Assembly (NCBI GenBank): GCA_977020255.1
Contig: CDROCS010006375.1
Coordinates: 1-64,000 of the forward strand
Direction of reading: 5' to 3'
Source: Obrimoposthia wandeli
Lineage: Eukaryota
Length of the DNA: 64,000 nt
The notes under the pieces were generated by a model that was not told the DNA's origin, made no database searches, and saw only the letters and a program-made list of their open reading frames with translations. Position numbers and translations under genes: made by a program. Within the stretch, counting starts at the first letter, position 1; the number at the start of each line of letters is the position of its first letter. Positions 8,546-24,895 of the stretch are shown one piece after another.

Positions 8546-9511
8546 TTATCCCTTGGCGCGTAATTGACGAGCGTGAAAAACATAGCCTAACAAATTCAGT
8601 AGAACTTGGGCCGCTAAAATGCTCGTAGTACCTGTGTGGTCGTAATCAGGTGCCACTTCGCATAAATCAATGCCGACAACTTCACCCTGATTGGCAACTT
8701 GCTGTAACACTTCCATCACTTCGTAATACTGAAAACCGCCATGACTTGGGGTACCAGTGCCTGGCGCAATAGAGGGATCAAAGCCGTCGATATCGATAGT
8801 AATATAATAATTAACATCTTTAGGGATTAGTGCCATGACACCTTCAACACCCAAACGACGAACATCGCGAACTGAGAGTATGGTTGAGCCTGCATCTTCA
8901 GCCAGTTTGTGATCATCACGATTTGACGAAGAAACATTGCGAATACCCAACTGCGTCATGCCCGTAATAAACTCCTGCTCGGAAGCTCGACGCATCGGAT
9001 TACCATGACCAAATTTCACACCGTGGCGTTCATCGACAAAGTCTAAGTGAGCATCAATTTGAATAATATGCATTGGCCCCTGGCCTTCAAATGCACGGAT
9101 ACAAGGTGCATTGACGGAGTGGTCACCACCAACAATCACTGGGAGCGCACCTGCCTCTAACATTTTACGCACGCCATATTCAATATTGTCGTGACATTTA
9201 ACCGTGTCAGTGTGCACCATATCTGCATCGCCAATATCAACCATTTTGACACCATCTAAGTACATCGTATCTTCTTCGTACGAATACGCACCGCCATGGC
9301 CGAAAGAAAACAGTGTTGAAGCTTCTCGTATCGAACGCGGCCCCATTCTGGCACCTGAACGCCATTGGGTACCACAGTCAAAAGGAGCCCCCATAAAGGC
9401 GACGTCTGCTTTAATATTGTCCCAGTCTTCGCAGATGGGGCTCTTGGCGAAAGTACAGAAGCCTACAAACGGTAGGTTTAACCGTCCTTTTTCATAAGAA
9501 TTTTCACTCAT
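8546..9511 (-). CDS. speB: Agmatinase-family ureohydrolase (substrate unproven)
   Basis: GGDHS, DAHLD and DIDGFDPSIAPGTGTP Mn-binding motifs; start at MSENSY with GGAGG RBS. Confidence 0.85.
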   Translation of the reverse strand: MSENSYEKGRLNLPFVGFCTFAKSPICEDWDNIKADVAFMGAPFDCGTQWRSGARMGPRSIREASTLFSFGHGGAYSYEEDTMYLDGVKMVDIGDADMVHTDTVKCHDNIEYGVRKMLEAGALPVIVGGDHSVNAPCIRAFEGQGPMHIIQIDAHLDFVDERHGVKFGHGNPMRRASEQEFITGMTQLGIRNVSSSNRDDHKLAEDAGSTILSVRDVRRLGVEGVMALIPKDVNYYITIDIDGFDPSIAPGTGTPSHGGFQYYEVMEVLQQVANQGEVVGIDLCEVAPDYDHTGTTSILAAQVLLNLLGYVFHARQLRAKG

Positions 9512-9665
9512 ATTCTTTTCCTCCACAATACTAGGTCTTATTATTAGAGGTAGCTCCTCTGGGATGCACCTCTGTTTCATCGAGTCTTTACGATGATTAA
9601 CCTGAGTATTGCAAATGGAATTGCATTATAAAATATTAAAATTTAGATGCTGACATTCAATAATT

Positions 9666-10556
9666 TTATGTAATATTTAACTCTGAGAGTAAATCTTCGA
9701 CGAACACTTTGATAACATTAGGGATTGCCGCTGAATTGCGACTAGCTAGATAGAATGGCGAATCATGCGCTAGCCCTAAATGGGTAATTTCTCGCATTTG
9801 AGCGTTATCTGTCCATTGGCGAGCGTAATGACAGGGGAGAAAACCAATAAACTGACCGCTATTGATCAACATCGCCTGCGCTTCCATATTACTGACTAGC
9901 GCTTTGTTTTGAATACCTGGTAAATCATTTTGCTGTAAGTAGGCTCGGCTAGAAACAGGATACTGCTGTAAACTTTCCCAACTAATCTGCGCATCTTCTA
10001 GGGCAAATAATGGATGCTGAGCTGAACAGTAAAAACCGTGTTGCTCACGGTACAGTAATTGATAGTTAAGACTGGCCTCACGCCGTTGAAAAGGCCCTAT
10101 AGCAATATGTAGTGCCCCATTAAGTAGCTCTCGCTCTAGTGTATCCGGCGCCAAAATATCCACGTTGATCGCTACATCGTTCTGTCTTGAAAAAAAACGT
10201 CTAATAGCGCGCGCAACCGGAAAATCTGGGTTAGTGATCGTATTATCAATCAGCCCCAGTCGCAGCGACCCAGTCAATTTATTACGTAACTCTCCAAGAT
10301 CTGCTTCAAAATCGGAGACACTATTGAGCATAGCCCGGCATTTTTCGTATACTAGCAATCCCTTTTCGGTCAAATTAAATCCACTGCGCCCACGATGGCA
10401 CAACTGAAACCCTAAGCGTATTTCAAAATCACGGATATGTGTACTAATGGCTGGCTGACTCATACCAAGCAGCCCTTGAGCACTCACAAAACCACCACAT
10501 TCCACCACTGCACAGAAGGTTTTCATGTGCTTCATCGCATATTGGGCCATTTTCAT
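9666..10556 (-). CDS. LysR-family regulator (GbuR/GpuR-like)
   Basis: N-terminal HTH SQPAISTHIRDFEIRLGFQLCHRGRSGF; next to a ureohydrolase gene. Confidence 0.85.
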   Translation of the reverse strand: MKMAQYAMKHMKTFCAVVECGGFVSAQGLLGMSQPAISTHIRDFEIRLGFQLCHRGRSGFNLTEKGLLVYEKCRAMLNSVSDFEADLGELRNKLTGSLRLGLIDNTITNPDFPVARAIRRFFSRQNDVAINVDILAPDTLERELLNGALHIAIGPFQRREASLNYQLLYREQHGFYCSAQHPLFALEDAQISWESLQQYPVSSRAYLQQNDLPGIQNKALVSNMEAQAMLINSGQFIGFLPCHYARQWTDNAQMREITHLGLAHDSPFYLASRNSAAIPNVIKVFVEDLLSELNIT

Positions 10557-10749
10557 ATTCTCGCGTTACATTACAAAAAATAATATAAACATAATAAACA
10601 ATGTATTTTTTAATGGAAAGTCTTTTGCAATACTCGGGTGAATCAAGGGATCCTTTGAACAAATTAAGTTCAATCCATAGCGTGATAGCAATGAGATTTG
10701 CTACGAGGATCTAAACAATAAAAAAAACCCAAAATGCGAGGATCAACCT

Positions 10750-11769
10750 ATGTTGACTATTAGCAAGAACCTGAAGAAATTAGCCCTTGTTACAGCAATA
10801 ACAGCGCTGCCAACTTTTGCTGCCGCCGAAGAGTGGAAGTTTGCTATTGAAGAAATACCAGGCTCTATCATGGATACCTATGCGAATGAGTTTAAGCGTA
10901 TCATTGAAGAGAAAACCAACGGCGAAACGACCATTAACATCTACCCATTAGGCTCGCTAGGTACGCCTACTGAAATAGTAGAGCAGGCAACTGACGGCGT
11001 GATTCACTTCGCCAACGTCTCAGTCGGCAACTTAGGCACCATCGTTCCTGAATCTCAAGTACTACTCGTTCCCTACGCGCTACCTTCAGAGCCAAAGGCT
11101 ATTTCATCTATATTGACCCAAAGTAAAGTCCTCTACGAACAGCTTGGCAGCGACTTCAACACTAAAGGCCTACAGCTACACACTATGTATTCTGAAGGCG
11201 CGCAAGTTTGGACAACAAACAAACCGGTACACAACCCTGCTGACTTAAAGAACTTCAAAATGCGTGTCATGGTTTCACCTATTTTACTGAAAGCCTATAA
11301 AGATTTAGGGGCTAGCCCGACACCATTGCCTTTTGGTGAAGTTTACGGCGCATTGCAGCTAAAAACTGTTGACGGTCAGATCAATCCTGTACCAACTATC
11401 GAAGAAATGAAGTTCTACGAAGTAACTGATTATATGATTTGGGCGGGCGAACAAGAGCTTGTTACTACAATCGTTTCTGGTACTGACTGGTACGAAACCT
11501 TACCCGCCGCTAAGAAAGCGCTAATCAGCGAAACAATGACTGAAATGCGTGGTTTTATCGATCAGGTAGTGAGCGATTTCAACCAGGATAAGCTCGCAAA
11601 AATTAAAGCAGCTAAACCGAGCATTGAGTTCATCAAGCTATCACAAGCTGAACAAGCTGTGTTCCGTGAGCGCAGCAAAGCTACTCACCGTTCATTTGCT
11701 GATATTGCCGGTAAGCGCGGTCAAGAGCTATTGACGGCATTGATCAAAGAGATCGACTCAACAAAGTAA
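10750..11769 (+). CDS. dctP: TRAP transporter substrate-binding protein (TeaA/UehA-like)
   Basis: Signal peptide; WKFAIEE, KMRVM, GASPTPLPFGEVYGALQ..TVDGQ.NP. Confidence 0.9.
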   Translation: MLTISKNLKKLALVTAITALPTFAAAEEWKFAIEEIPGSIMDTYANEFKRIIEEKTNGETTINIYPLGSLGTPTEIVEQATDGVIHFANVSVGNLGTIVPESQVLLVPYALPSEPKAISSILTQSKVLYEQLGSDFNTKGLQLHTMYSEGAQVWTTNKPVHNPADLKNFKMRVMVSPILLKAYKDLGASPTPLPFGEVYGALQLKTVDGQINPVPTIEEMKFYEVTDYMIWAGEQELVTTIVSGTDWYETLPAAKKALISETMTEMRGFIDQVVSDFNQDKLAKIKAAKPSIEFIKLSQAEQAVFRERSKATHRSFADIAGKRGQELLTALIKEIDSTK

Positions 11770-18956: not shown

Positions 18957-19114
18957 TCATACGTTGATTGAACCTCAACCTCTCGCCGCAAACGTGACTA
19001 AACAGAGGACGCGCTACCGGGTAGTTCCATTTGTGCAAGGCACTTATAATAATTGATGTCATGGATCTAGCTCGTTAGAATCATATTTCAGGGATGCTAT
19101 ATGTGCTATTAAAC

Positions 19115-19594
19115 ATGAAAAATGTAATCTTAGATGCGCTAGATATCCGCATTTTAAGCGCCGTGCAACTGCATGGCCAAATAAGTAAAGCTCGACTGTC
19201 TGAACTGGTCAACCTTTCGCCTACTCCTTGCTGGCTACGGCTCGCCAAACTCAAGAAGGCAGGTTTCATTGCAGGTTATCGAGGGGACATTGCCATTGAC
19301 AAGATTCTCGACCTGACAAAAGTGATAGTGACCATTTCACTAAAGAGCCACAGTCGTGAAGTCTTTGAGCGTTTCGAACGCTGCATTCAAGGTATCGATG
19401 AGATAACCGAATGCAGTGCAACGGGTGGTGGCTCTGATTATGTGATGAAAGTCATCACCAGTAGCCTGCCTGAATTTCAACAATTGATTGAAACACTTCT
19501 CAGCGAGGAAATAGGTATTGACCGCTACTTTATTTACGTGATTACCCGAGAAGTAAAATCGGCCCCGTTAAATCTAGCCAAGCTGTTACAGTGA
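19115..19594 (+). CDS. Lrp/AsnC-family regulator
   Basis: LDALDIRIL...VNLSPTPCWLRLAKL..AGFI.GY; EC.ATGGGSDY. Confidence 0.88.
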   Translation: MKNVILDALDIRILSAVQLHGQISKARLSELVNLSPTPCWLRLAKLKKAGFIAGYRGDIAIDKILDLTKVIVTISLKSHSREVFERFERCIQGIDEITECSATGGGSDYVMKVITSSLPEFQQLIETLLSEEIGIDRYFIYVITREVKSAPLNLAKLLQ

Positions 19595-19747: not shown

Positions 19748-21043
19748 TCAATCATTTGTACGATCAAGGTTAGGCAGTACCGCAGCGCCATCCAAAGTTT
19801 TCAAAAAAGCTTCAAGCTGTTCTAATTGACGTGAAGCCAAAGGTAAAGGTTCTATGTCTAAATGCTGTGCGTTTACCCCATTGTTCTGCACTTTAGCTTC
19901 ATCACTATATTGCGACACCGCCCGAGTGTAAAAATGCAGTACGTCGCCAAGAGTTGGTAAACTTCCGTTATGCATATAAGGTGCTGTTTGTGCGACATTA
20001 CGCAAAGTCGGAACTTTAAAGGCAAACGTGAGTTCAGCACTATCGCGCTTGGCAAAGCTTAACTCAGCACAATCAACATTGGGATCCTTGACATCAGAGA
20101 AGGATGAGCGGCAGTTAAATGCGCTATTGAGCGCTAGCTCAATACCACTTTGTCGACCTAACCCCAACGGCTCATTACTATCTTTAATGCCTGTCACTTG
20201 GAAGTCACCATTGCTAAACAATGCGCCATTGTGACAGCGCATACATTGGCCTCGCTGATCATCGATGAATAGCTTCAGTCCTTGCTGTTCATCACGATTC
20301 AACTTCTCAGAGCGCCCCTCACTGAGAAGTTCACGAGCAAAGCGATCAAAGCGCGAATCGACCGGAAACAATAGCGATTGGTAAGCCGCTAAGCTTTTCC
20401 CCATATTTGCGAAAACACGATTAACCTGGTTTTGCTGTTGCGTACTCAGTAACTCCCAATTTTCTTGCCACTTTGGATTATTTCCTGCAGGTGTTGCGTG
20501 CTTAGGTAATCCTTCGAATGAGGGTAACTCTGCAAAGATTTCACGATAGCGCTGACCATAGAAAGTAACCATCAACTTAGCCAGCTGCACTCTGTTAGCA
20601 CCGTGCTCCGCGGGGTCTTCCATGGGTCCCAGTGCTTGCGCCCACAAGCTATCGGCCCTGCCATCCCAAAATTGCCAAGGTTGCCAAGCAGCGCCCAACA
20701 GTGCTGGAGAATGGCGCTTGGTGGGCGCTATACCAAAAGAAAGTGGCTGCGGGTCGGCAAAACCGCTGCTGGGAAAATGACAGCTGGCACAAGAGACTTG
20801 GCCATTGCCACTCAAGCGTTTATCAAAAAACAGAGCCTCTCCCAACGCCGCGGCCTCGGGGTCATCCCAGTACTTGTTACCCGTGCTTACTACCCATTGT
20901 TTTAATTGGTCGCGCGGGGGTAACACTAAACTATTAATACGTGCCAGTTCTTGTTCAGACCAGCTCAAGGACGCTTGACGCTGAAACACACCCGCCCAAG
21001 CAAGTAGCCCAAGCACAGCGGCACACAGCACTAGTCTCCACAT
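19748..21043 (-). CDS. Periplasmic di-heme cytochrome c peroxidase superfamily protein (MauG/BthA/MbnH type)
   Basis: Two CxxCH motifs (CASCH, CMRCH), QFWDGRA, FKVPTLRNV..TAPYMHNG...VLHFY; N-terminal membrane/signal segment. Confidence 0.88.
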   Translation of the reverse strand: MWRLVLCAAVLGLLAWAGVFQRQASLSWSEQELARINSLVLPPRDQLKQWVVSTGNKYWDDPEAAALGEALFFDKRLSGNGQVSCASCHFPSSGFADPQPLSFGIAPTKRHSPALLGAAWQPWQFWDGRADSLWAQALGPMEDPAEHGANRVQLAKLMVTFYGQRYREIFAELPSFEGLPKHATPAGNNPKWQENWELLSTQQQNQVNRVFANMGKSLAAYQSLLFPVDSRFDRFARELLSEGRSEKLNRDEQQGLKLFIDDQRGQCMRCHNGALFSNGDFQVTGIKDSNEPLGLGRQSGIELALNSAFNCRSSFSDVKDPNVDCAELSFAKRDSAELTFAFKVPTLRNVAQTAPYMHNGSLPTLGDVLHFYTRAVSQYSDEAKVQNNGVNAQHLDIEPLPLASRQLEQLEAFLKTLDGAAVLPNLDRTND

Positions 21044-21478
21044 TTAAGGCTGTAACTCGAAAGCAACTACTAGCGGTTCTGACATATCAGGGATTTGTAC
21101 ACTGACTGTCCAATCGCCCCACATCTGAAACTTTAGCCCCTGAATATCAAAAAGTATCTGCTGGCGGTTGTTCTGCGTTAAGTTCATTGCAATGGGCTGT
21201 GTCGGCAATCCATGACCATGGGCAGGCATGCCGCCAGAAATACGCACTTGGCTCGCCTTGATCGCGGTTAAATCTGCCTGATTAGACAGTGCTGTTAATT
21301 GTGCTTGCCACTGGTAAATGTGATTTAACTGCGGCGTTTGCTTAGCGCGTAACGTCAATTGGTAATCAGCTGTCGCTACGCTGTAAGAAGCCTCTTCGGC
21401 GTAAACAACCCGATAAGGCTGTAATAAAGCCACTAAGGTAATAGCGATGAAGGCCGTGCGTAATAAGAATTTTTTCAT
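21044..21478 (-). CDS. Secreted YtkA/FixH-like protein
   Basis: Signal peptide (MKKFLL...VYA), GGMPAHGHGLPT and FQMWGDW; abuts the peroxidase start. Confidence 0.7.
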   Translation of the reverse strand: MKKFLLRTAFIAITLVALLQPYRVVYAEEASYSVATADYQLTLRAKQTPQLNHIYQWQAQLTALSNQADLTAIKASQVRISGGMPAHGHGLPTQPIAMNLTQNNRQQILFDIQGLKFQMWGDWTVSVQIPDMSEPLVVAFELQP

Positions 21479-21618
21479 TTTTTCTCTCTGTAATAGATCG
21501 AGATAAATGTGCAGATCACAGGGCATGATACAAATATTCCCCCAAGGCCTAATAGGTCCTTAAAGCAAAAACCACTGCCAGAAGATACGTACTATGCCCT
21601 GCTTATTTCGATCTTAGT

Positions 21619-22359
21619 TTAAGCTTGCAGACGGATAAAGCGCTGTACGGCAAAACCGCATAAACTACCCAATAGAATGAAAAATAACGCCATCCCGATA
21701 CTCGTCATCAAAAAGAATTGACTGGTCAATTGAGTAAGGGCAACCACTGCCGCTGGCTCCGTATTGGCAAAACCATGACTTTCAGGGAGGGGAGCGCCCA
21801 CAATATGCGGCAAAGCAACAAAAAGTACACCGACAAATTTGTATTTAGTCTCTAGGTAATACAGGCCTGCAAGACCCAGCACACTTGAGGCAGCACAGAA
21901 CATCCACCACTGTTGCCGGTTGATCAGTTCGGCGGCCACTGTACCTGGGACTTCTGGATGTAGACCGAATAGAGCGGGAGCAATAAAAAGCGCTAATAGT
22001 GCCGCAACGCCCCAAAGAGCACCAGAGCGAATGGATATAGGCGGCTTATTCGCTTTCAAATTATGCAGAGCCATCATCGAAATCATCACGAGTGAATAGG
22101 CAATTGCAATAGCGATGTTAGCGCTGACAGTGGCAAAAATTCTCGGAGTACCGTCTTCAGGCGACCAAGGCTGTTCGTCAGATTCCGCTGCTTGAGACAC
22201 ACTCTCTCCATGGGAGTGTGATACTGGCGAATCCAGAACTTCGTAAGTTTCAGCACCGTAGATTATTGGGCTGATTTGGGTTTGTTGAAAAAGGCCGTAT
22301 AACAAGCCGGTGATTATCCCGACAGCGATTGATGCCAGTAGAATATTTCTTAATACCAC
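21619..22359 (-). CDS. cbtA: Cobalt transporter subunit CbtA
   Basis: PIIYGAETYE, His motif HSHGE, W.P.DG..R, GLHPEVPG, RQQWW, ALPHIVGAP. Confidence 0.88.
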   Translation of the reverse strand: MVLRNILLASIAVGIITGLLYGLFQQTQISPIIYGAETYEVLDSPVSHSHGESVSQAAESDEQPWSPEDGTPRIFATVSANIAIAIAYSLVMISMMALHNLKANKPPISIRSGALWGVAALLALFIAPALFGLHPEVPGTVAAELINRQQWWMFCAASSVLGLAGLYYLETKYKFVGVLFVALPHIVGAPLPESHGFANTEPAAVVALTQLTSQFFLMTSIGMALFFILLGSLCGFAVQRFIRLQA

Positions 22360-22639
22360 GTTTGTATCTCCCAGTGATAGGACACAGATAGACAGCTAAT
22401 GCAGTCGTTTAACTGTCTTTTAATAACTTAGTGCGAGAGATTGTGAACGATAGCGTGCGATCATATGGCGCTAGCAATAGCTTGGATGTCCGTATTGTAC
22501 CCCTCATTCCAGAGAAAGGCCTATACGGATGCTGCCATTACCCAGGCTTTATGCTGACCTTATTGTCGCTCGCTACTATTCCTGCACCCCACGACTAGCG
22601 ATGAGTCGTAAACGAGACAGCGCTAGTGGCTTTTACGCT

Positions 22640-22822
22640 CTAATGACAGGGGAAAGCAAAGGCATGTCGCGCATCATGTGCCGCGTTATGCATCGCATCC
22701 ATCGGCGCAAAGCCGACAACCAAGAATAGCGCTATTCCAAAAGTAATAGCTGCGCCTAACTGTACAGCAGTTGATAGCGGTAGTATTTGTAGCCCACTTG
22801 AGGCCGTTATTTGTTTTTGCAT
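22640..22822 (-). CDS. cbtB: Cobalt transporter subunit CbtB
   Basis: One TM plus C-terminal HNAAHDARHAFAFPCH; start probably ATG 22822 (GTG 22843 is an alternative). Confidence 0.9.
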   Translation of the reverse strand: MQKQITASSGLQILPLSTAVQLGAAITFGIALFLVVGFAPMDAMHNAAHDARHAFAFPCH

Positions 22823-22869
22823 TGTAAGCTCCGTTACACTCACCCGTGTAATTGATAATTAGAAGGACT

Positions 22870-22990
22870 CATCAGGCTGGTTCCGGGCTACCGACTAATT
22901 GACTTAGTAGAATACCGTTGCGGGGGCAGCGAAGGTGGCGCATGGTCACTGCGCTTCATACTTCCCATTTACTTTTAAGAATCTCCGATT
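22870..22990 (-). ncRNA. Cobalamin riboswitch (short form)
   Basis: Minus strand reads AATGGGAAG...CTGCCCCCGCAACGGT...AGCCCGGAACCAGCCT directly upstream of cbtB. Confidence 0.9.
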
Positions 22991-23416
22991 AAGTCACACA
23001 TCTAACTGTGGATAACTAAGCGTACAACGGCGCGAAGGATATAACGCGTAGTGGCTAGCTTGTCTCTCTTTCTGATAAAAGAGAGAGTGCTTAGATATCT
23101 ATCCTAGGCTACGAAGAAAAACTTGGACTCAGCGTTAACGGTTTAGTCAGACAGCTTATATGTCTGCCATTGCGGCCATGTTTGCGAGTCCCTCTTTGCG
23201 CCAAGGTGTGTGCCTTATTCAGAGGTTCCATCTAACACCTCAAGAGTGGGCGCAACCTTATCACAAAGGCCCTCTACTCGCCTCCTATGTTTCTCACTCT
23301 CAGCTGAAAAGCATTCATGCACGACCCACTGGCACCAACGGTTTCGCCAATGAGTACCTTGACAAAAATGGGGCAAAAGTATCTTATCTTGCAACCGCCT
23401 ATGTGAGAAATACTCT

Positions 23417-24895
23417 ATGCTCAGCTTTCTTTCAAAATTATCCACTGATAGCGAATTCAGTCTGCAAAAGCAGCTGCGCTCACAGCTGACGGCGGCGATA
23501 ATCGAAGGGCATATACCCTGCGCAACACCACTGCCCTCTACCCGAAAGCTAGCTCAGCAACTAGGTGTGTCGCGCAATACTGTCATCCACACTTATCAGC
23601 AGTTAATCGATGATGGTTATCTGGTTTCTCGACAGCGCGCCGGCTACTACATCAATCAGGAGATGGTGCGTGATAGCATTCGCAACAACAGCTCACCTGC
23701 GTGCGAGCGCAGCGCCCAACTGCCTGTCTGGTCTGATTTCCTCAGACGCCAACCGAGCAGCGAAAAACTCAATAAACTGCACAACTGGCAATCTTATCCC
23801 TATCCTTTTATCTACGGCCAACTAGACCCTGCTCTATTTCCCACTAATCACTGGCGTGAATGCTGCCGTGATTCGGTAACGGTACAATCTATTAAAGAGT
23901 GGACGGGGGATAGATACGATGACGATGACGCCTTGCTTATTGAGCAAATCCGCTCGCGTATCTTGCCCCGGCGTGGCGTGTGGGCGGAAACAGATGAAAT
24001 TCTTATCACAGTAGGCTCTCAGCATGGTCTATACATGACGTCACAGCTGCTACTCGATGCTACGACAACCTTTGGCATCGAAGACCCAGGCTACCCAGAC
24101 GCCGCACGGATAGCGCGCCAAACGGATACTAAAATTCGTCCGCTGGACGTCGATGATGATGGTCTGATTGTCGACGAACAGTTAATAGGCTGTAATGTCA
24201 TATTCACTACCCCCAGCCATCAGTTCCCCACCACAGTTACTCTTCCGCTAAGCAGACGCCGTGCTTTACTTGATCAGGCGCGACGAGATAATTTCCTGAT
24301 CATTGAAGATGACTACGAAAGTGAGACCAGCTTTGCCGTTAAACCGACTCCCGCACTGAAGAGCCTAGATCGCGACCAACGGGTCATCTATCTAGGCAGT
24401 TTGTCGAAAACCCTCTCCCCTGGCTTGCGTTTGGGTTACATGGTGGCGAACAGAGAGCTGATTGCCGAACTGCGCGAGTTTCGCCGTATGATGTTGCGCC
24501 ACCCTCCGATGAACAACCAGCGGGCGGTCGGTTTATTTTTGGCTCGTGGTTATCACGACTCACTGATTAACAATTTAGTGAATATCTACAGAGAGCGCTG
24601 GCAAGAAGTCGCGCAAGCGCTAAAAGCTCACATGCCAAATGCCGCTAAACCACCCGCCTTTGGCGGCTCTGCGTACTGGGTAAAAGGCGGGCCCGATTTG
24701 GACGCCCGCGAACTCAAGCGCCTGGCACTTGTGCAGGGGGTAATTATTGAATCGGGTGATATTTATTTTTATCACCAAGACTGCCCGCTAAACTTCTTTC
24801 GCATCGGCTATTCCTCGATTGCCACAGAGCGGATCAAACCGGGGATTGATCGGTTGGCAAAAGCGATTGAGCAATTAGGGGGCGGCAGGAATTAA
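23417..24895 (+). CDS. MocR/GabR-family PLP-dependent regulator, TauR-like
   Basis: LPSTRKLA..LGVSRNTV HTH, YPYPFIYGQ, TPSHQFPT, IIEDDY, SKTLSPGLRLGY. Confidence 0.88.
   Translation: MLSFLSKLSTDSEFSLQKQLRSQLTAAIIEGHIPCATPLPSTRKLAQQLGVSRNTVIHTYQQLIDDGYLVSRQRAGYYINQEMVRDSIRNNSSPACERSAQLPVWSDFLRRQPSSEKLNKLHNWQSYPYPFIYGQLDPALFPTNHWRECCRDSVTVQSIKEWTGDRYDDDDALLIEQIRSRILPRRGVWAETDEILITVGSQHGLYMTSQLLLDATTTFGIEDPGYPDAARIARQTDTKIRPLDVDDDGLIVDEQLIGCNVIFTTPSHQFPTTVTLPLSRRRALLDQARRDNFLIIEDDYESETSFAVKPTPALKSLDRDQRVIYLGSLSKTLSPGLRLGYMVANRELIAELREFRRMMLRHPPMNNQRAVGLFLARGYHDSLINNLVNIYRERWQEVAQALKAHMPNAAKPPAFGGSAYWVKGGPDLDARELKRLALVQGVIIESGDIYFYHQDCPLNFFRIGYSSIATERIKPGIDRLAKAIEQLGGGRN

What the first reader, a model, noticed from the sequence alone, without database searches (positions are those of the whole stretch)
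19748..22990. B12-riboswitch cobalt-uptake locus extended by a Tyr-ligated di-heme enzyme and a His/Trp partner protein
Seen: all on one strand, cobalamin riboswitch > cbtB > cbtA > secreted YtkA-like protein (GGMPAHGHG, MWGDW) > abutting di-heme protein. The di-heme protein keeps the bridging Trp (FWDGR) and has Tyr (VLHFY) where MauG has its axial Tyr (ILFY) and classical peroxidases have Met. Established: His/Tyr di-heme enzymes modify partner-protein Trp (MauG makes TTQ; MbnH makes kynurenine in the copper-binding MbnP). Inference: a possible cobalt analogue of MbnPH, in which the enzyme matures a periplasmic metal chaperone that feeds CbtAB under B12 control. I know of no description of this system.
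Basis: partly seen in the sequence, partly recalled or inferred. Interest (0 to 1): 0.85.

Follow-up and report, generated by a model that had tools for sequence, protein, structure and literature searches.

The report
B12-switched cobalt importer with di-heme helper pair
A vitamin-B12-sensing RNA switch sits ahead of a proposed cobalt importer (CbtB/CbtA) joined to a secreted metal-binding protein and a MauG-type two-heme oxidising enzyme; the same four-gene layout recurs in several marine bacteria and may be an undescribed, enzyme-assisted route of metal uptake.

Summary
On the minus strand lie a cobalamin riboswitch, cbtB, cbtA, a secreted 144-aa protein and an abutting 431-aa di-heme protein.

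- **Riboswitch:** it scores 25.1 bits, below Rfam's 31.5 cut-off. The same hit sits at the same place in all five other linked loci, two of them above the cut-off.
- **Di-heme protein:** Tyr372 aligns without gaps to MauG's axial ligand Tyr294. Tyr372, Trp126 and both CxxCH motifs are invariant in 120 homologues.
- **Conservation:** the four-gene order recurs in six other loci from gamma- and alpha-proteobacteria. Their di-haems form one clade (97/97).
- **Wider module:** the partner and di-heme genes are an older two-gene pair found widely without cbtAB. It usually comes with a DoxX-like membrane protein, and in three loci the two proteins are fused.

The partner is a YtkA-like (copper-chaperone-type) beta-sandwich, not an MbnP homologue. 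Its conserved Met/His ligands look Cu(I)-like. Only Trp120 is largely specific to the cobalt-linked clade. Trp modification, cobalt binding and B12-controlled co-transcription remain untested, because no RNA-seq runs exist.

I found no published description. A first-reader note (s1-208512) flags the same layout on another piece of this genome record. Verdict: a real, conserved, rare locus and a new variant of the MauG/MbnH-plus-partner theme.

The parts
22858..23004 (-). Cobalamin riboswitch aptamer (short form, with almost no P6 extension)
   Evidence: RF00174, 25.1 bits, full-length model match, E 4.6e-4. Below the gathering score, but the same hit lies just upstream of cbtB in L001, L004, L027, L007 and L006.
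22640..22822 (-). cbtB, 60 aa, one transmembrane helix and a His-rich C-terminus
   Evidence: Pfam CbtB 1.1e-16. NCBIfam TIGR02459 64.2 bits against a 64.4 cut-off. The ATG at 22822 has a GGAG upstream. The mechanical ORF starts at a GTG at 22843.
22360..22639 (-). Non-coding spacer between cbtB and cbtA (281 nt counting 22640, the last base of the cbtB stop codon), with predicted structure
   Evidence: No ORF and no repeat elsewhere in the window. MFE -89.9 kcal/mol, z -2.88. No Rfam hit other than the riboswitch. Relatives have about 8-60 nt here.
21619..22359 (-). cbtA, 246 aa, polytopic membrane protein with an HSHG loop
   Evidence: Pfam CbtA 6.4e-31, full length. NCBIfam TIGR02458 147.5 bits against a 182.9 cut-off. 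Hydrophobic segments found.
21479..21618 (-). Spacer between cbtA and the partner gene (137 nt folded), with a predicted long hairpin
   Evidence: MFE -41.4 kcal/mol, z -2.99. No terminator-like site by the simple scan.
21044..21478 (-). Secreted YtkA-like metal-binding beta-sandwich, the 'partner' (144 aa). Trp57, Met84, His87, His89, Met119, Trp120 and Trp123 are conserved.
   Evidence: 13-sequence alignment A1 (its numbering is +1). Family-wide alignment. AF2 model pLDDT 88, all-beta. Best PDB fold hits are H. pylori CrdA and FetP, both weak. Motif coordinates.
19748..21043 (-). MauG-type (His/Tyr) di-heme enzyme, 431 aa, with an N-terminal hydrophobic anchor. Heme motifs at 20777-20791 and 20231-20245, bridging Trp126 in FWDGR at 20657-20671, Tyr372 in VLHFY at 19928-19942.
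   Evidence: Pfam CCP_MauG 2.9e-38. NCBIfam best hits are the MbnH family (151.7 bits) and MauG (122.9 bits), both far below their cut-offs. Tyr372 aligns with MauG Tyr294. Invariance in 120 homologues. AF2 pLDDT 87, top fold hits MauG.

Best explanation
This is a B12-repressible metal-uptake operon. A cobalamin riboswitch controls cbtB-cbtA, the proposed cobalt permease, and most likely also the two genes downstream.

Those two genes encode an obligate periplasmic pair. One is a soluble YtkA-like beta-sandwich with a Met/His/Trp site. The other is a membrane-anchored MauG-type di-heme enzyme with a His/Tyr-ligated electron-transfer heme.

The pair is an older module that normally travels with a DoxX-like membrane protein. 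It was recruited once to cbtAB in marine proteobacteria.

My preferred mechanism is inferred, not shown. The di-heme uses H2O2, or O2 plus electrons, to reach a high-valent state. It then oxidises its partner protein at an exposed Trp next to the metal ligands; Trp120 is the largely clade-specific candidate and Trp123 the family-wide one. This would create or retune a metal site that captures scarce metal and passes it to CbtAB, much as MbnH matures MbnP.

I put the architecture (four genes as one functional unit with a physically interacting pair) at about 0.8, and the Trp-modification step at about 0.35.
For: - The components are identified.
- The same gene order and strand recur in L001/L005, L004, L006, L007, L027 and the P0010 contig.
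- A riboswitch sits at the same place in 6 of 6 loci that have DNA.
- Genes are tightly packed in L006, L007 and L027, and the stop and start codons abut in the window.
- MauG-type features are present: Tyr372 aligns with MauG Tyr294. Tyr, bridging Trp and both heme motifs are invariant. Gln136, Pro140 and Glu146 are invariant.
- Canonical enzymes are His/Met and MauG-type enzymes are His/Tyr (PMC11892367, PMC6405878).
- Every di-heme homologue I looked up has a partner homologue directly upstream.
- Natural partner-di-heme fusions exist in L023, L025 and L013.
- The cbtAB-linked di-haems form one clade, 97/97, beside the DoxX-linked ones.
- MbnH installs kynurenine from a Trp of a WxW motif in a His/Met copper site of MbnP (PMC11951088). 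The partner here has Met-Trp-Gly-x-Trp plus Met-x-x-His-x-His.
Against: - No transcript data exist.
- The 137-nt and 281-nt structured spacers, and a hairpin in the same gap of L004, leave room for separate or attenuated expression.
- The partner is not homologous to MbnP.
- Trp57 and Trp123 are equally conserved in stand-alone homologues.
- Trp120 is absent from most di-heme-linked partners, so it cannot be the general substrate.
- Fusing an enzyme to a single-use substrate is unusual.
- Met/His ligands suit Cu(I) better than Co(II).
- CbtAB's cobalt role is itself only 'proposed', and both proteins fall just below the NCBIfam cut-offs.
Confidence: 0.4

Rival explanations
1. Metal redox rather than protein modification. 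The YtkA-like protein presents a bound metal ion, and the di-heme oxidises or reduces that ion, or exchanges electrons with it. Examples would be Co(II)/Co(III) or Cu(I)/Cu(II). Redox would then be coupled to capture or permeation, as in the EfeUOB or Fet3/Ftr1 logic.
For: - Stable 1:1 fusions of the two proteins occur in three loci, which fits a permanent catalytic partnership.
- The module always accompanies a membrane protein: a DoxX-like one, from a quinone-linked family, or CbtAB.
- The metal ligands are conserved family-wide, whereas the candidate target Trp120 is not.
- The peroxidatic-site residues are conserved.
Against: - All MauG-type enzymes with a known substrate act on protein Trp residues (PMC11892367, PMC11951088).
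- No electron donor or acceptor is encoded in the cbtAB-linked loci.
- Low-potential His/Tyr haems are poor conventional electron carriers.
Confidence: 0.25
2. The pair handles copper, not cobalt. It is a generic YtkA-type copper chaperone with a peroxidase. Its place beside cbtAB then reflects copper/cobalt cross-talk, or a CbtAB substrate range wider than cobalt.
For: - YtkA/CtaK domains act in copper delivery in Bacillus (PMC13344008).
- The Met2His2 motif is unchanged between cbtAB-linked and other partners.
- In L024 and L013 the module sits next to galactose-oxidase-like copper radical oxidase genes.
- The best PDB fold hit is the copper-resistance protein CrdA.
Against: - A cobalamin riboswitch is conserved in all six cbtAB-linked loci.
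- The linked clade is monophyletic and has its own partner signature, FQMWG, which suggests specialisation.
Confidence: 0.15
3. An ordinary periplasmic peroxidase, with or without a chance neighbour. The di-heme simply removes H2O2, and the small protein is unrelated to its function.
For: - The databases annotate the protein as cytochrome c peroxidase.
- BthA, a His/Tyr enzyme, still turns over H2O2 (PMC6405878).
Against: - Tyr, not Met, is invariant at the axial position.
- Adjacency to the partner is strict across phyla, and the two are fused in places.
- Linkage to cbtAB and the riboswitch is conserved.
Confidence: 0.06

Closest known systems
MbnH/MbnP (methanobactin operons; PDB 6e1c, 7L6G)
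   Same: A MauG-type His/Tyr di-heme is encoded next to a secreted Trp-rich His/Met metal-binding protein in a metal-uptake locus. MbnH is the best full-length PDB sequence hit (E 5e-27) and the best NCBIfam family.
   Different: The score lies far below the MbnH family cut-off (151.7 against 362.9 bits). The partner is YtkA-like, not an MbnP homologue. Its motif is W-G-x-W rather than WxW. The locus has no mbn genes and no TonB receptor, is controlled by a B12 riboswitch, and pairs with CbtAB. Kynurenine has not been tested.
MauG / pre-methylamine dehydrogenase
   Same: Tyr372 aligns ungapped with the axial ligand Tyr294. The bridging Trp and the Gln/Pro/Glu spacing of the peroxide-binding heme pocket are kept. 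MauG gives the top structural hits.
   Different: Identity is only 27-28%. There are no mau genes. The NCBIfam MauG score is 122.9 against a 443.9 cut-off. The substrate protein is unrelated.
BthA of Burkholderia (PDB 6nx0)
   Same: An orphan His/Tyr di-heme with no known substrate. BthA has a disulfide near the six-coordinate heme, and this clade has invariant Cys311/Cys325 at similar spacing (PMC6405878).
   Different: BthA has Ser in place of the bridging Trp and sits beside a phosphatase-like gene. It is only a weak sequence match (E 2e-15).
YtkA-like domain proteins (B. subtilis CtaK, C-terminal domain of YcnJ)
   Same: The same domain family, shown by transitive homology, and the same extracytoplasmic metal-chaperone setting next to a membrane permease (PMC13344008).
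   Different: Those proteins deliver copper to cytochrome oxidase and have no heme-enzyme partner. The window protein falls below the Pfam cut-off (17 against 25.9 bits).
B12-riboswitch cbtAB cobalt-transporter loci (comparative-genomic prediction; my own knowledge of Rodionov et al. 2003)
   Same: A riboswitch followed by cbtB and cbtA in the usual order.
   Different: Two extra periplasmic genes are attached. The window also has unusually long structured spacers.
EfeUOB iron uptake (functional analogy only; my own knowledge)
   Same: One metal-regulated operon encodes a permease, a periplasmic metal-binding protein and a periplasmic heme peroxidase.
   Different: None of the proteins is homologous. 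EfeB is a DyP-type mono-heme enzyme.

Membership tests
MauG-type (His/Tyr) branch of the bacterial di-heme peroxidase superfamily | Two CxxCH heme-binding motifs in a CCP_MauG fold | tested here: met
   CASCH and CMRCH are present. Pfam PF03150 2.9e-38. AF2 model with MauG/CCP top hits.
MauG-type (His/Tyr) branch of the bacterial di-heme peroxidase superfamily | Tyr in place of Met at the axial position of the six-coordinate heme | tested here: met
   Tyr372 aligns ungapped with MauG chain residue 294 and with the MbnH Tyr. It is invariant in 121 of 121 sequences. Actual ligation is inferred from sequence only.
MauG-type (His/Tyr) branch of the bacterial di-heme peroxidase superfamily | Formation of a bis-Fe(IV) state with H2O2 (near-IR band) and poor peroxidase turnover | not testable with these tools
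   Needs purified protein.
MauG or MbnH orthologue (NCBIfam TIGR03791 / TIGR04039) | Score at or above the curated family cut-off | tested here: not met
   151.7 against 362.85 bits (MbnH family) and 122.9 against 443.85 bits (MauG).
MbnPH-type system | The partner is an MbnP-family protein with the WxW motif | tested here: not met
   No NCBIfam hit, and the only Pfam hit is a weak YtkA match. The motif is M-W-G-D-W.
MbnPH-type system | The partner Trp is converted to kynurenine and is needed for metal binding | not testable with these tools
   Needs co-expression and mass spectrometry.
YtkA-like domain (PF13115) | Pfam gathering score | tested here: not met
   17 bits against 25.9, E 0.0097.
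YtkA-like domain (PF13115) | Homology through intermediates, plus a beta-sandwich fold | tested here: met
   Hits P0013-P0024 carry PF13115 at E 5e-11 to 3e-6. They share the GGMPAHGHGLPT and F-x-M-x-G-x-W motifs. The AF2 model is an all-beta sandwich, pLDDT 88.
CbtA/CbtB proposed cobalt transporter | Pfam family cut-offs | tested here: met
   CbtA 108.5 against 30.7 bits, CbtB 61.1 against 27 bits.
CbtA/CbtB proposed cobalt transporter | NCBIfam curated cut-offs | tested here: not met
   CbtA 147.5 against 182.9 bits, CbtB 64.2 against 64.4 bits. Both are divergent members.
CbtA/CbtB proposed cobalt transporter | Transports cobalt | not testable with these tools
   The families themselves are labelled 'proposed'.
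Cobalamin riboswitch RF00174 | Rfam gathering score | tested here: not met
   25.1 against 31.5 bits in the window. Met in the orthologous positions of L001 (42.7) and L004 (42.3).
Cobalamin riboswitch RF00174 | Full-length aptamer match with the B12 box, placed directly upstream of a B12-related gene, conserved in orthologous loci | tested here: met
   Model positions 1-189 matched, with a high-confidence core (GCUGCCCCCGCAAC and AGCCCGGAACCAGCC blocks). The placement is the same in 6 of 6 loci.

The most novel reading that the evidence does not exclude
This would be the first enzyme-assisted cobalt-acquisition pathway. A MauG-type di-heme would use high-valent iron chemistry to do one of two things. 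It could build a Trp-derived ligand on a YtkA-like periplasmic protein. Or it could oxidise, reduce or strip cobalt from the strong organic complexes that hold nearly all cobalt in sea water. Either way it would feed CbtAB under B12 feedback. By extension, the much larger YtkA-like/di-heme/DoxX-like module would be an unrecognised, widespread family of redox-assisted metal uptake systems.
Probability: 0.2. Interest if true: 0.85.

Novelty: new variant of a known kind. Interest (0 to 1): 0.68.

Why it matters
CbtAB has been a 'proposed' cobalt transporter for about two decades (by my recollection), with no known accessory factors. MauG-type di-heme enzymes are prized for long-range bis-Fe(IV) protein oxidation, yet only two substrates are established (preMADH and MbnP).

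This locus gives a defined candidate substrate, a 144-aa secreted protein, for a large and uniformly Tyr-ligated di-heme clade. Gene fusions show that the two proteins work together. B12 regulation gives a physiological cue.

Expressing the pair would quickly show whether a new Trp-derived cofactor or a new metal-redox step exists. It would also show whether marine bacteria use it to scavenge picomolar cobalt.

Tried and rejected
- **Rfam at gathering threshold:** no hit in the window. The riboswitch was recovered only with the E-value threshold and by comparison with relatives.
- **RNA-seq test of co-transcription:** only DNA runs hold this sequence.
- **Fold searches with the partner model:** these returned generic Ig-like folds (MHC class II, beta-2-microglobulin). 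CrdA and FetP were the only metal-related matches, at TM about 0.4-0.5, so no precise structural family follows.
- **A redox-partner swap in Granulosicoccaceae:** I considered that the FAD oxidoreductase following the partner-like gene there had replaced the di-heme. I rejected this because it has no signal peptide and looks like an unrelated cytoplasmic neighbour.
- **The 281-nt cbtB-cbtA spacer as a repeat or mobile element:** no copy elsewhere in the window, no ORF and no Rfam family.
- **Primary MbnH paper:** it could not be fetched by DOI, so I used reviews.
- **Literature searches:** YtkA, CbtA or riboswitch combined with MauG or cytochrome c peroxidase gave nothing relevant.
- **Model geometry:** Distances between the conserved Met/His/Trp residues, and docking in the fusion proteins, could not be measured.
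Full report
**1. What is in the window.**
ORF listing and Pfam place four genes on the minus strand:
- cbtB (PF09489, 1.1e-16);
- cbtA (PF09490, 6.4e-31, full-length match);
- a 144-aa secreted protein with a weak YtkA-like hit (E 0.0097);
- a 431-aa CCP_MauG protein (2.9e-38).

The partner's real start is the ATG at 21478 (MKKFLL..., a signal peptide ending VYA/EE). Its TAA stop is followed at once by the di-heme's ATG. The unit is bounded by a convergent Lrp-type gene (19094-19594, +) and a divergent MocR/GntR-type gene (23417-24895, +).

**2. The riboswitch.**
Nothing reaches Rfam's gathering score in the window. A permissive scan of 22300-23600 gives one hit: RF00174 at 22858-23004 (-), the full model, 25.1 bits, E 4.6e-4. 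The conserved core blocks align at high posterior probability, and almost all of the variable P6 region is missing.

In the relatives the same family hits directly upstream of cbtB:

| Locus | Bits |
|---|---|
| L001 | 42.7 |
| L004 | 42.3 |
| L027 | 30.2 |
| Window | 25.1 |
| L007 | 24.0 |
| L006 | 23.4 |

A related locus without cbtAB (L030) has no such hit. Six of six placements make the element credible despite the low score. The short form resembles the P6-lacking class of cobalamin riboswitches known from marine sequences (my own knowledge).

**3. The di-heme is MauG-type.**
- A 66-residue query around VLHFY finds MauG as the best solved relative. It aligns without gaps, so that Tyr372 falls on residue 294 of the 373-residue MauG chain. 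Tyr294 is the axial ligand whose Y294H variant is in PDB 3orv (PMC6405878).
- The full-length search puts MbnH (6e1c) first, and its Tyr also aligns with Tyr372.
- Published work states that canonical enzymes are His/Met and MauG-type enzymes are His/Tyr at this heme (PMC11892367, PMC6405878).
- Among the 120 best homologues (39-67% identity), Tyr372, Trp126 of FWDGR and both CxxCH motifs are invariant.
- A 30-sequence alignment adds invariant Gln136, Pro140, Glu146, Cys311 and Cys325. By my recollection the Gln/Pro/Glu spacing equals that of MauG's Gln103/Pro107/Glu113. The Cys pair recalls the BthA disulfide (PMC6405878).
- NCBIfam ranks the MbnH family (151.7 bits) and MauG (122.9 bits) first, both far below their cut-offs. 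The protein belongs to the MauG-type branch but is an orthologue of neither.
- The AF2 model is confident (pLDDT 87, pTM 0.87), and MauG chains lead the Foldseek list.

**4. The partner.**
- A word-indexed search found 12 close homologues, then YtkA-annotated proteins.
- An exhaustive profile search of 1.84 billion cluster representatives found 7 hits at E <= 1e-30, 315 at E <= 1e-10 and 1029 at E <= 1e-3. The cobalt-linked type is therefore rare within a moderate-sized family.
- In true protein numbering, Trp57, Gly82-Gly83-Met84, His87, His89, Met119, Trp120 and Trp123 are invariant in the close set.
- Across the wider family, the GGMP-A-H-G-H-G-LPT and F-x-M-x-G-x-W motifs persist. Position 120 is variable there; Trp occurs only in the cbtAB-linked clade plus L030 and L032.
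- The AF2 model is an eight-strand beta sandwich (pLDDT 88). Fold hits are generic Ig-like folds, with the copper proteins CrdA and FetP as the only metal-related matches.
- YtkA/CtaK domains are implicated in copper delivery in Bacillus (PMC13344008).

**5. Conservation of the four-gene unit.**
Searches of loci with the window's four proteins show cbtB-cbtA-partner-di-heme, same order and strand, in:
- L001/L005 (Oceanospirillaceae MAG);
- L004 (another Oceanospirillaceae MAG);
- L006 (Pseudomonadales MAG);
- L007 (Sneathiella, an alpha-proteobacterium);
- L027;
- the contig carrying P0010, which shows cbtA, the partner and the di-heme; no cbtB gene was called there and no DNA was available to check.

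In L006, L007 and L027 the genes are tightly packed. In the window, L001 and L004 the gap between cbtA and the partner is 100-250 nt. It holds a stable hairpin in the window and a terminator-like hairpin in L004. The simple scan found no terminator in the window's gaps. Co-transcription is therefore likely but not shown, and no RNA-seq run holds this sequence.

**6. The pair is older and wider than its cobalt link.**
- Partner-first loci from the genome collection show a di-heme directly downstream in 15 of 23 cases. The exceptions are all Granulosicoccaceae, where the next gene is an unrelated cytoplasmic FAD oxidoreductase or a UvrD helicase.
- Five di-heme-first look-ups (Teredinibacter, Brevundimonas, Thalassotalea and two metagenome contigs) all have a partner homologue directly upstream.
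- In L023, L025 and L013 the two proteins share one reading frame with a short linker and no second signal peptide. This is Rosetta-stone evidence of physical cooperation.
- In L028 and L030-L032 a third gene follows. It encodes a DoxX-family membrane protein of about 345 aa, with roughly eight hydrophobic segments and a mature N-terminus HVRWF.
- In L024 and L013 the module lies beside galactose-oxidase-like genes.
- A maximum-likelihood tree of 24 di-haems puts the six cbtAB-linked ones in one clade (97/97). That clade lies inside a 100/100 clade shared with the DoxX-linked ones (midpoint root). The simplest reading is a single recruitment of the pair to cbtAB, followed by spread between gamma- and alpha-proteobacteria.

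**7. Mechanism.**
Shown here:
- the identity of the parts;
- the MauG-type signature;
- obligate pairing, with fusions;
- conserved cbtAB and riboswitch linkage.

Inferred: that the di-heme acts on the partner, and how.

*The MbnPH-like model.* MbnH makes kynurenine from a Trp in a WxW motif of a His/Met copper site (PMC11951088). This is the best precedent, and the partner offers Met119-Trp120-Gly-x-Trp123 next to Met84/His87/His89.

*Points against it.* The fusions argue otherwise, as does the family-wide conservation of Trp57 and Trp123 even in stand-alone homologues. Trp120 is also missing from most di-heme-linked partners.

*Alternatives.* These points keep a metal-redox role and a copper-specific role alive.

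*Metal identity.* It is unresolved. The riboswitch and CbtAB point to cobalt. The ligand set and the family history point to copper.

**8. Novelty.**
Full-text searches found nothing relevant when YtkA, CbtA/CbtB, cobalt or riboswitch were combined with MauG or cytochrome c peroxidase. The 2019 superfamily network paper describes MauG, BthA and canonical clusters only. Within what the library covers, the system appears undescribed.

A first-reader note on another piece of the same genome record (s1-208512) flags the same architecture. That is a second sighting, not independent support.

Noticed in passing
window 22360-22640 (-): The spacer between cbtB and cbtA is 281 nt, whereas relatives have about 8-60 nt. 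It has no ORF, no copy elsewhere in the window and no Rfam hit, yet it folds better than shuffles (z -2.88). It could be a processing or stability element, or an insertion.
   Followed up: partly
window 21482-21618 (-); L004 7901-7930: The gap between cbtA and the partner forms a long hairpin (z -2.99). L004 has a 13-bp terminator-like hairpin in the same gap. This may be a partial terminator or stabiliser that sets the ratio of membrane to periplasmic products.
   Followed up: partly
L028 7289-8335, L030 7392-8423, L031 6396-7439, L032 6413-7027: The closest non-cbtAB relatives carry a third gene after the di-heme. It encodes a DoxX-family membrane protein of about 345 aa with roughly eight hydrophobic segments. 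Its predicted mature N-terminus is His-Val-Arg-Trp-Phe, a possible N-terminal-His metal site. DoxX shares a Pfam clan with MauE of the mau cluster.
   Followed up: partly
L023 4155-6023, L025 7578-9506, L013 7725-9464: These are natural fusions of the YtkA-like domain to the di-heme enzyme. L023 also has a His-rich N-terminal stretch. L013 is interrupted by a stop at 9111-9113.
   Followed up: partly
L024 4238-7937; L013 3509-7792: In Marinobacter salarius and a Myxococcota MAG the module sits just downstream of galactose/glyoxal-oxidase-like Kelch proteins and a second CCP_MauG domain fused to a beta-propeller. This recalls the Streptomyces GlxA, copper chaperone and heme peroxidase trio (my own knowledge).
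   Followed up: no
L007 7619-7951; L027 7627-7983: The alpha-proteobacterial versions hold an extra conserved ORF of 110-118 aa between cbtA and the partner. It has no signal peptide and no Pfam or NCBIfam family.
   Followed up: no
L027 1019-6238: A five-gene Opp/Nik-type ABC transporter (SBP_bac_5, two permeases, two ATPases) ends 90 nt before the riboswitch on the same strand. It may be a second nickel/cobalt-type uptake system in the neighbourhood.
   Followed up: no
L014 7805-9508 and about 9517-10770: A Spirochaetales MAG has two tandem di-heme genes after one partner gene.
   Followed up: no
L032 2216-2530 (-): A short MbnB/TglH/ChrH-family gene with a DUF3750 gene lies 2.5 kb upstream of the Thalassotalea partner/di-heme/DoxX-like module.
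   Followed up: no
one search hits such as P0152, P0153, P0155 (238-299 aa): Some family members carry two tandem partner-type domains. Others (P0230, 582 aa) look like further fusions.
   Followed up: no
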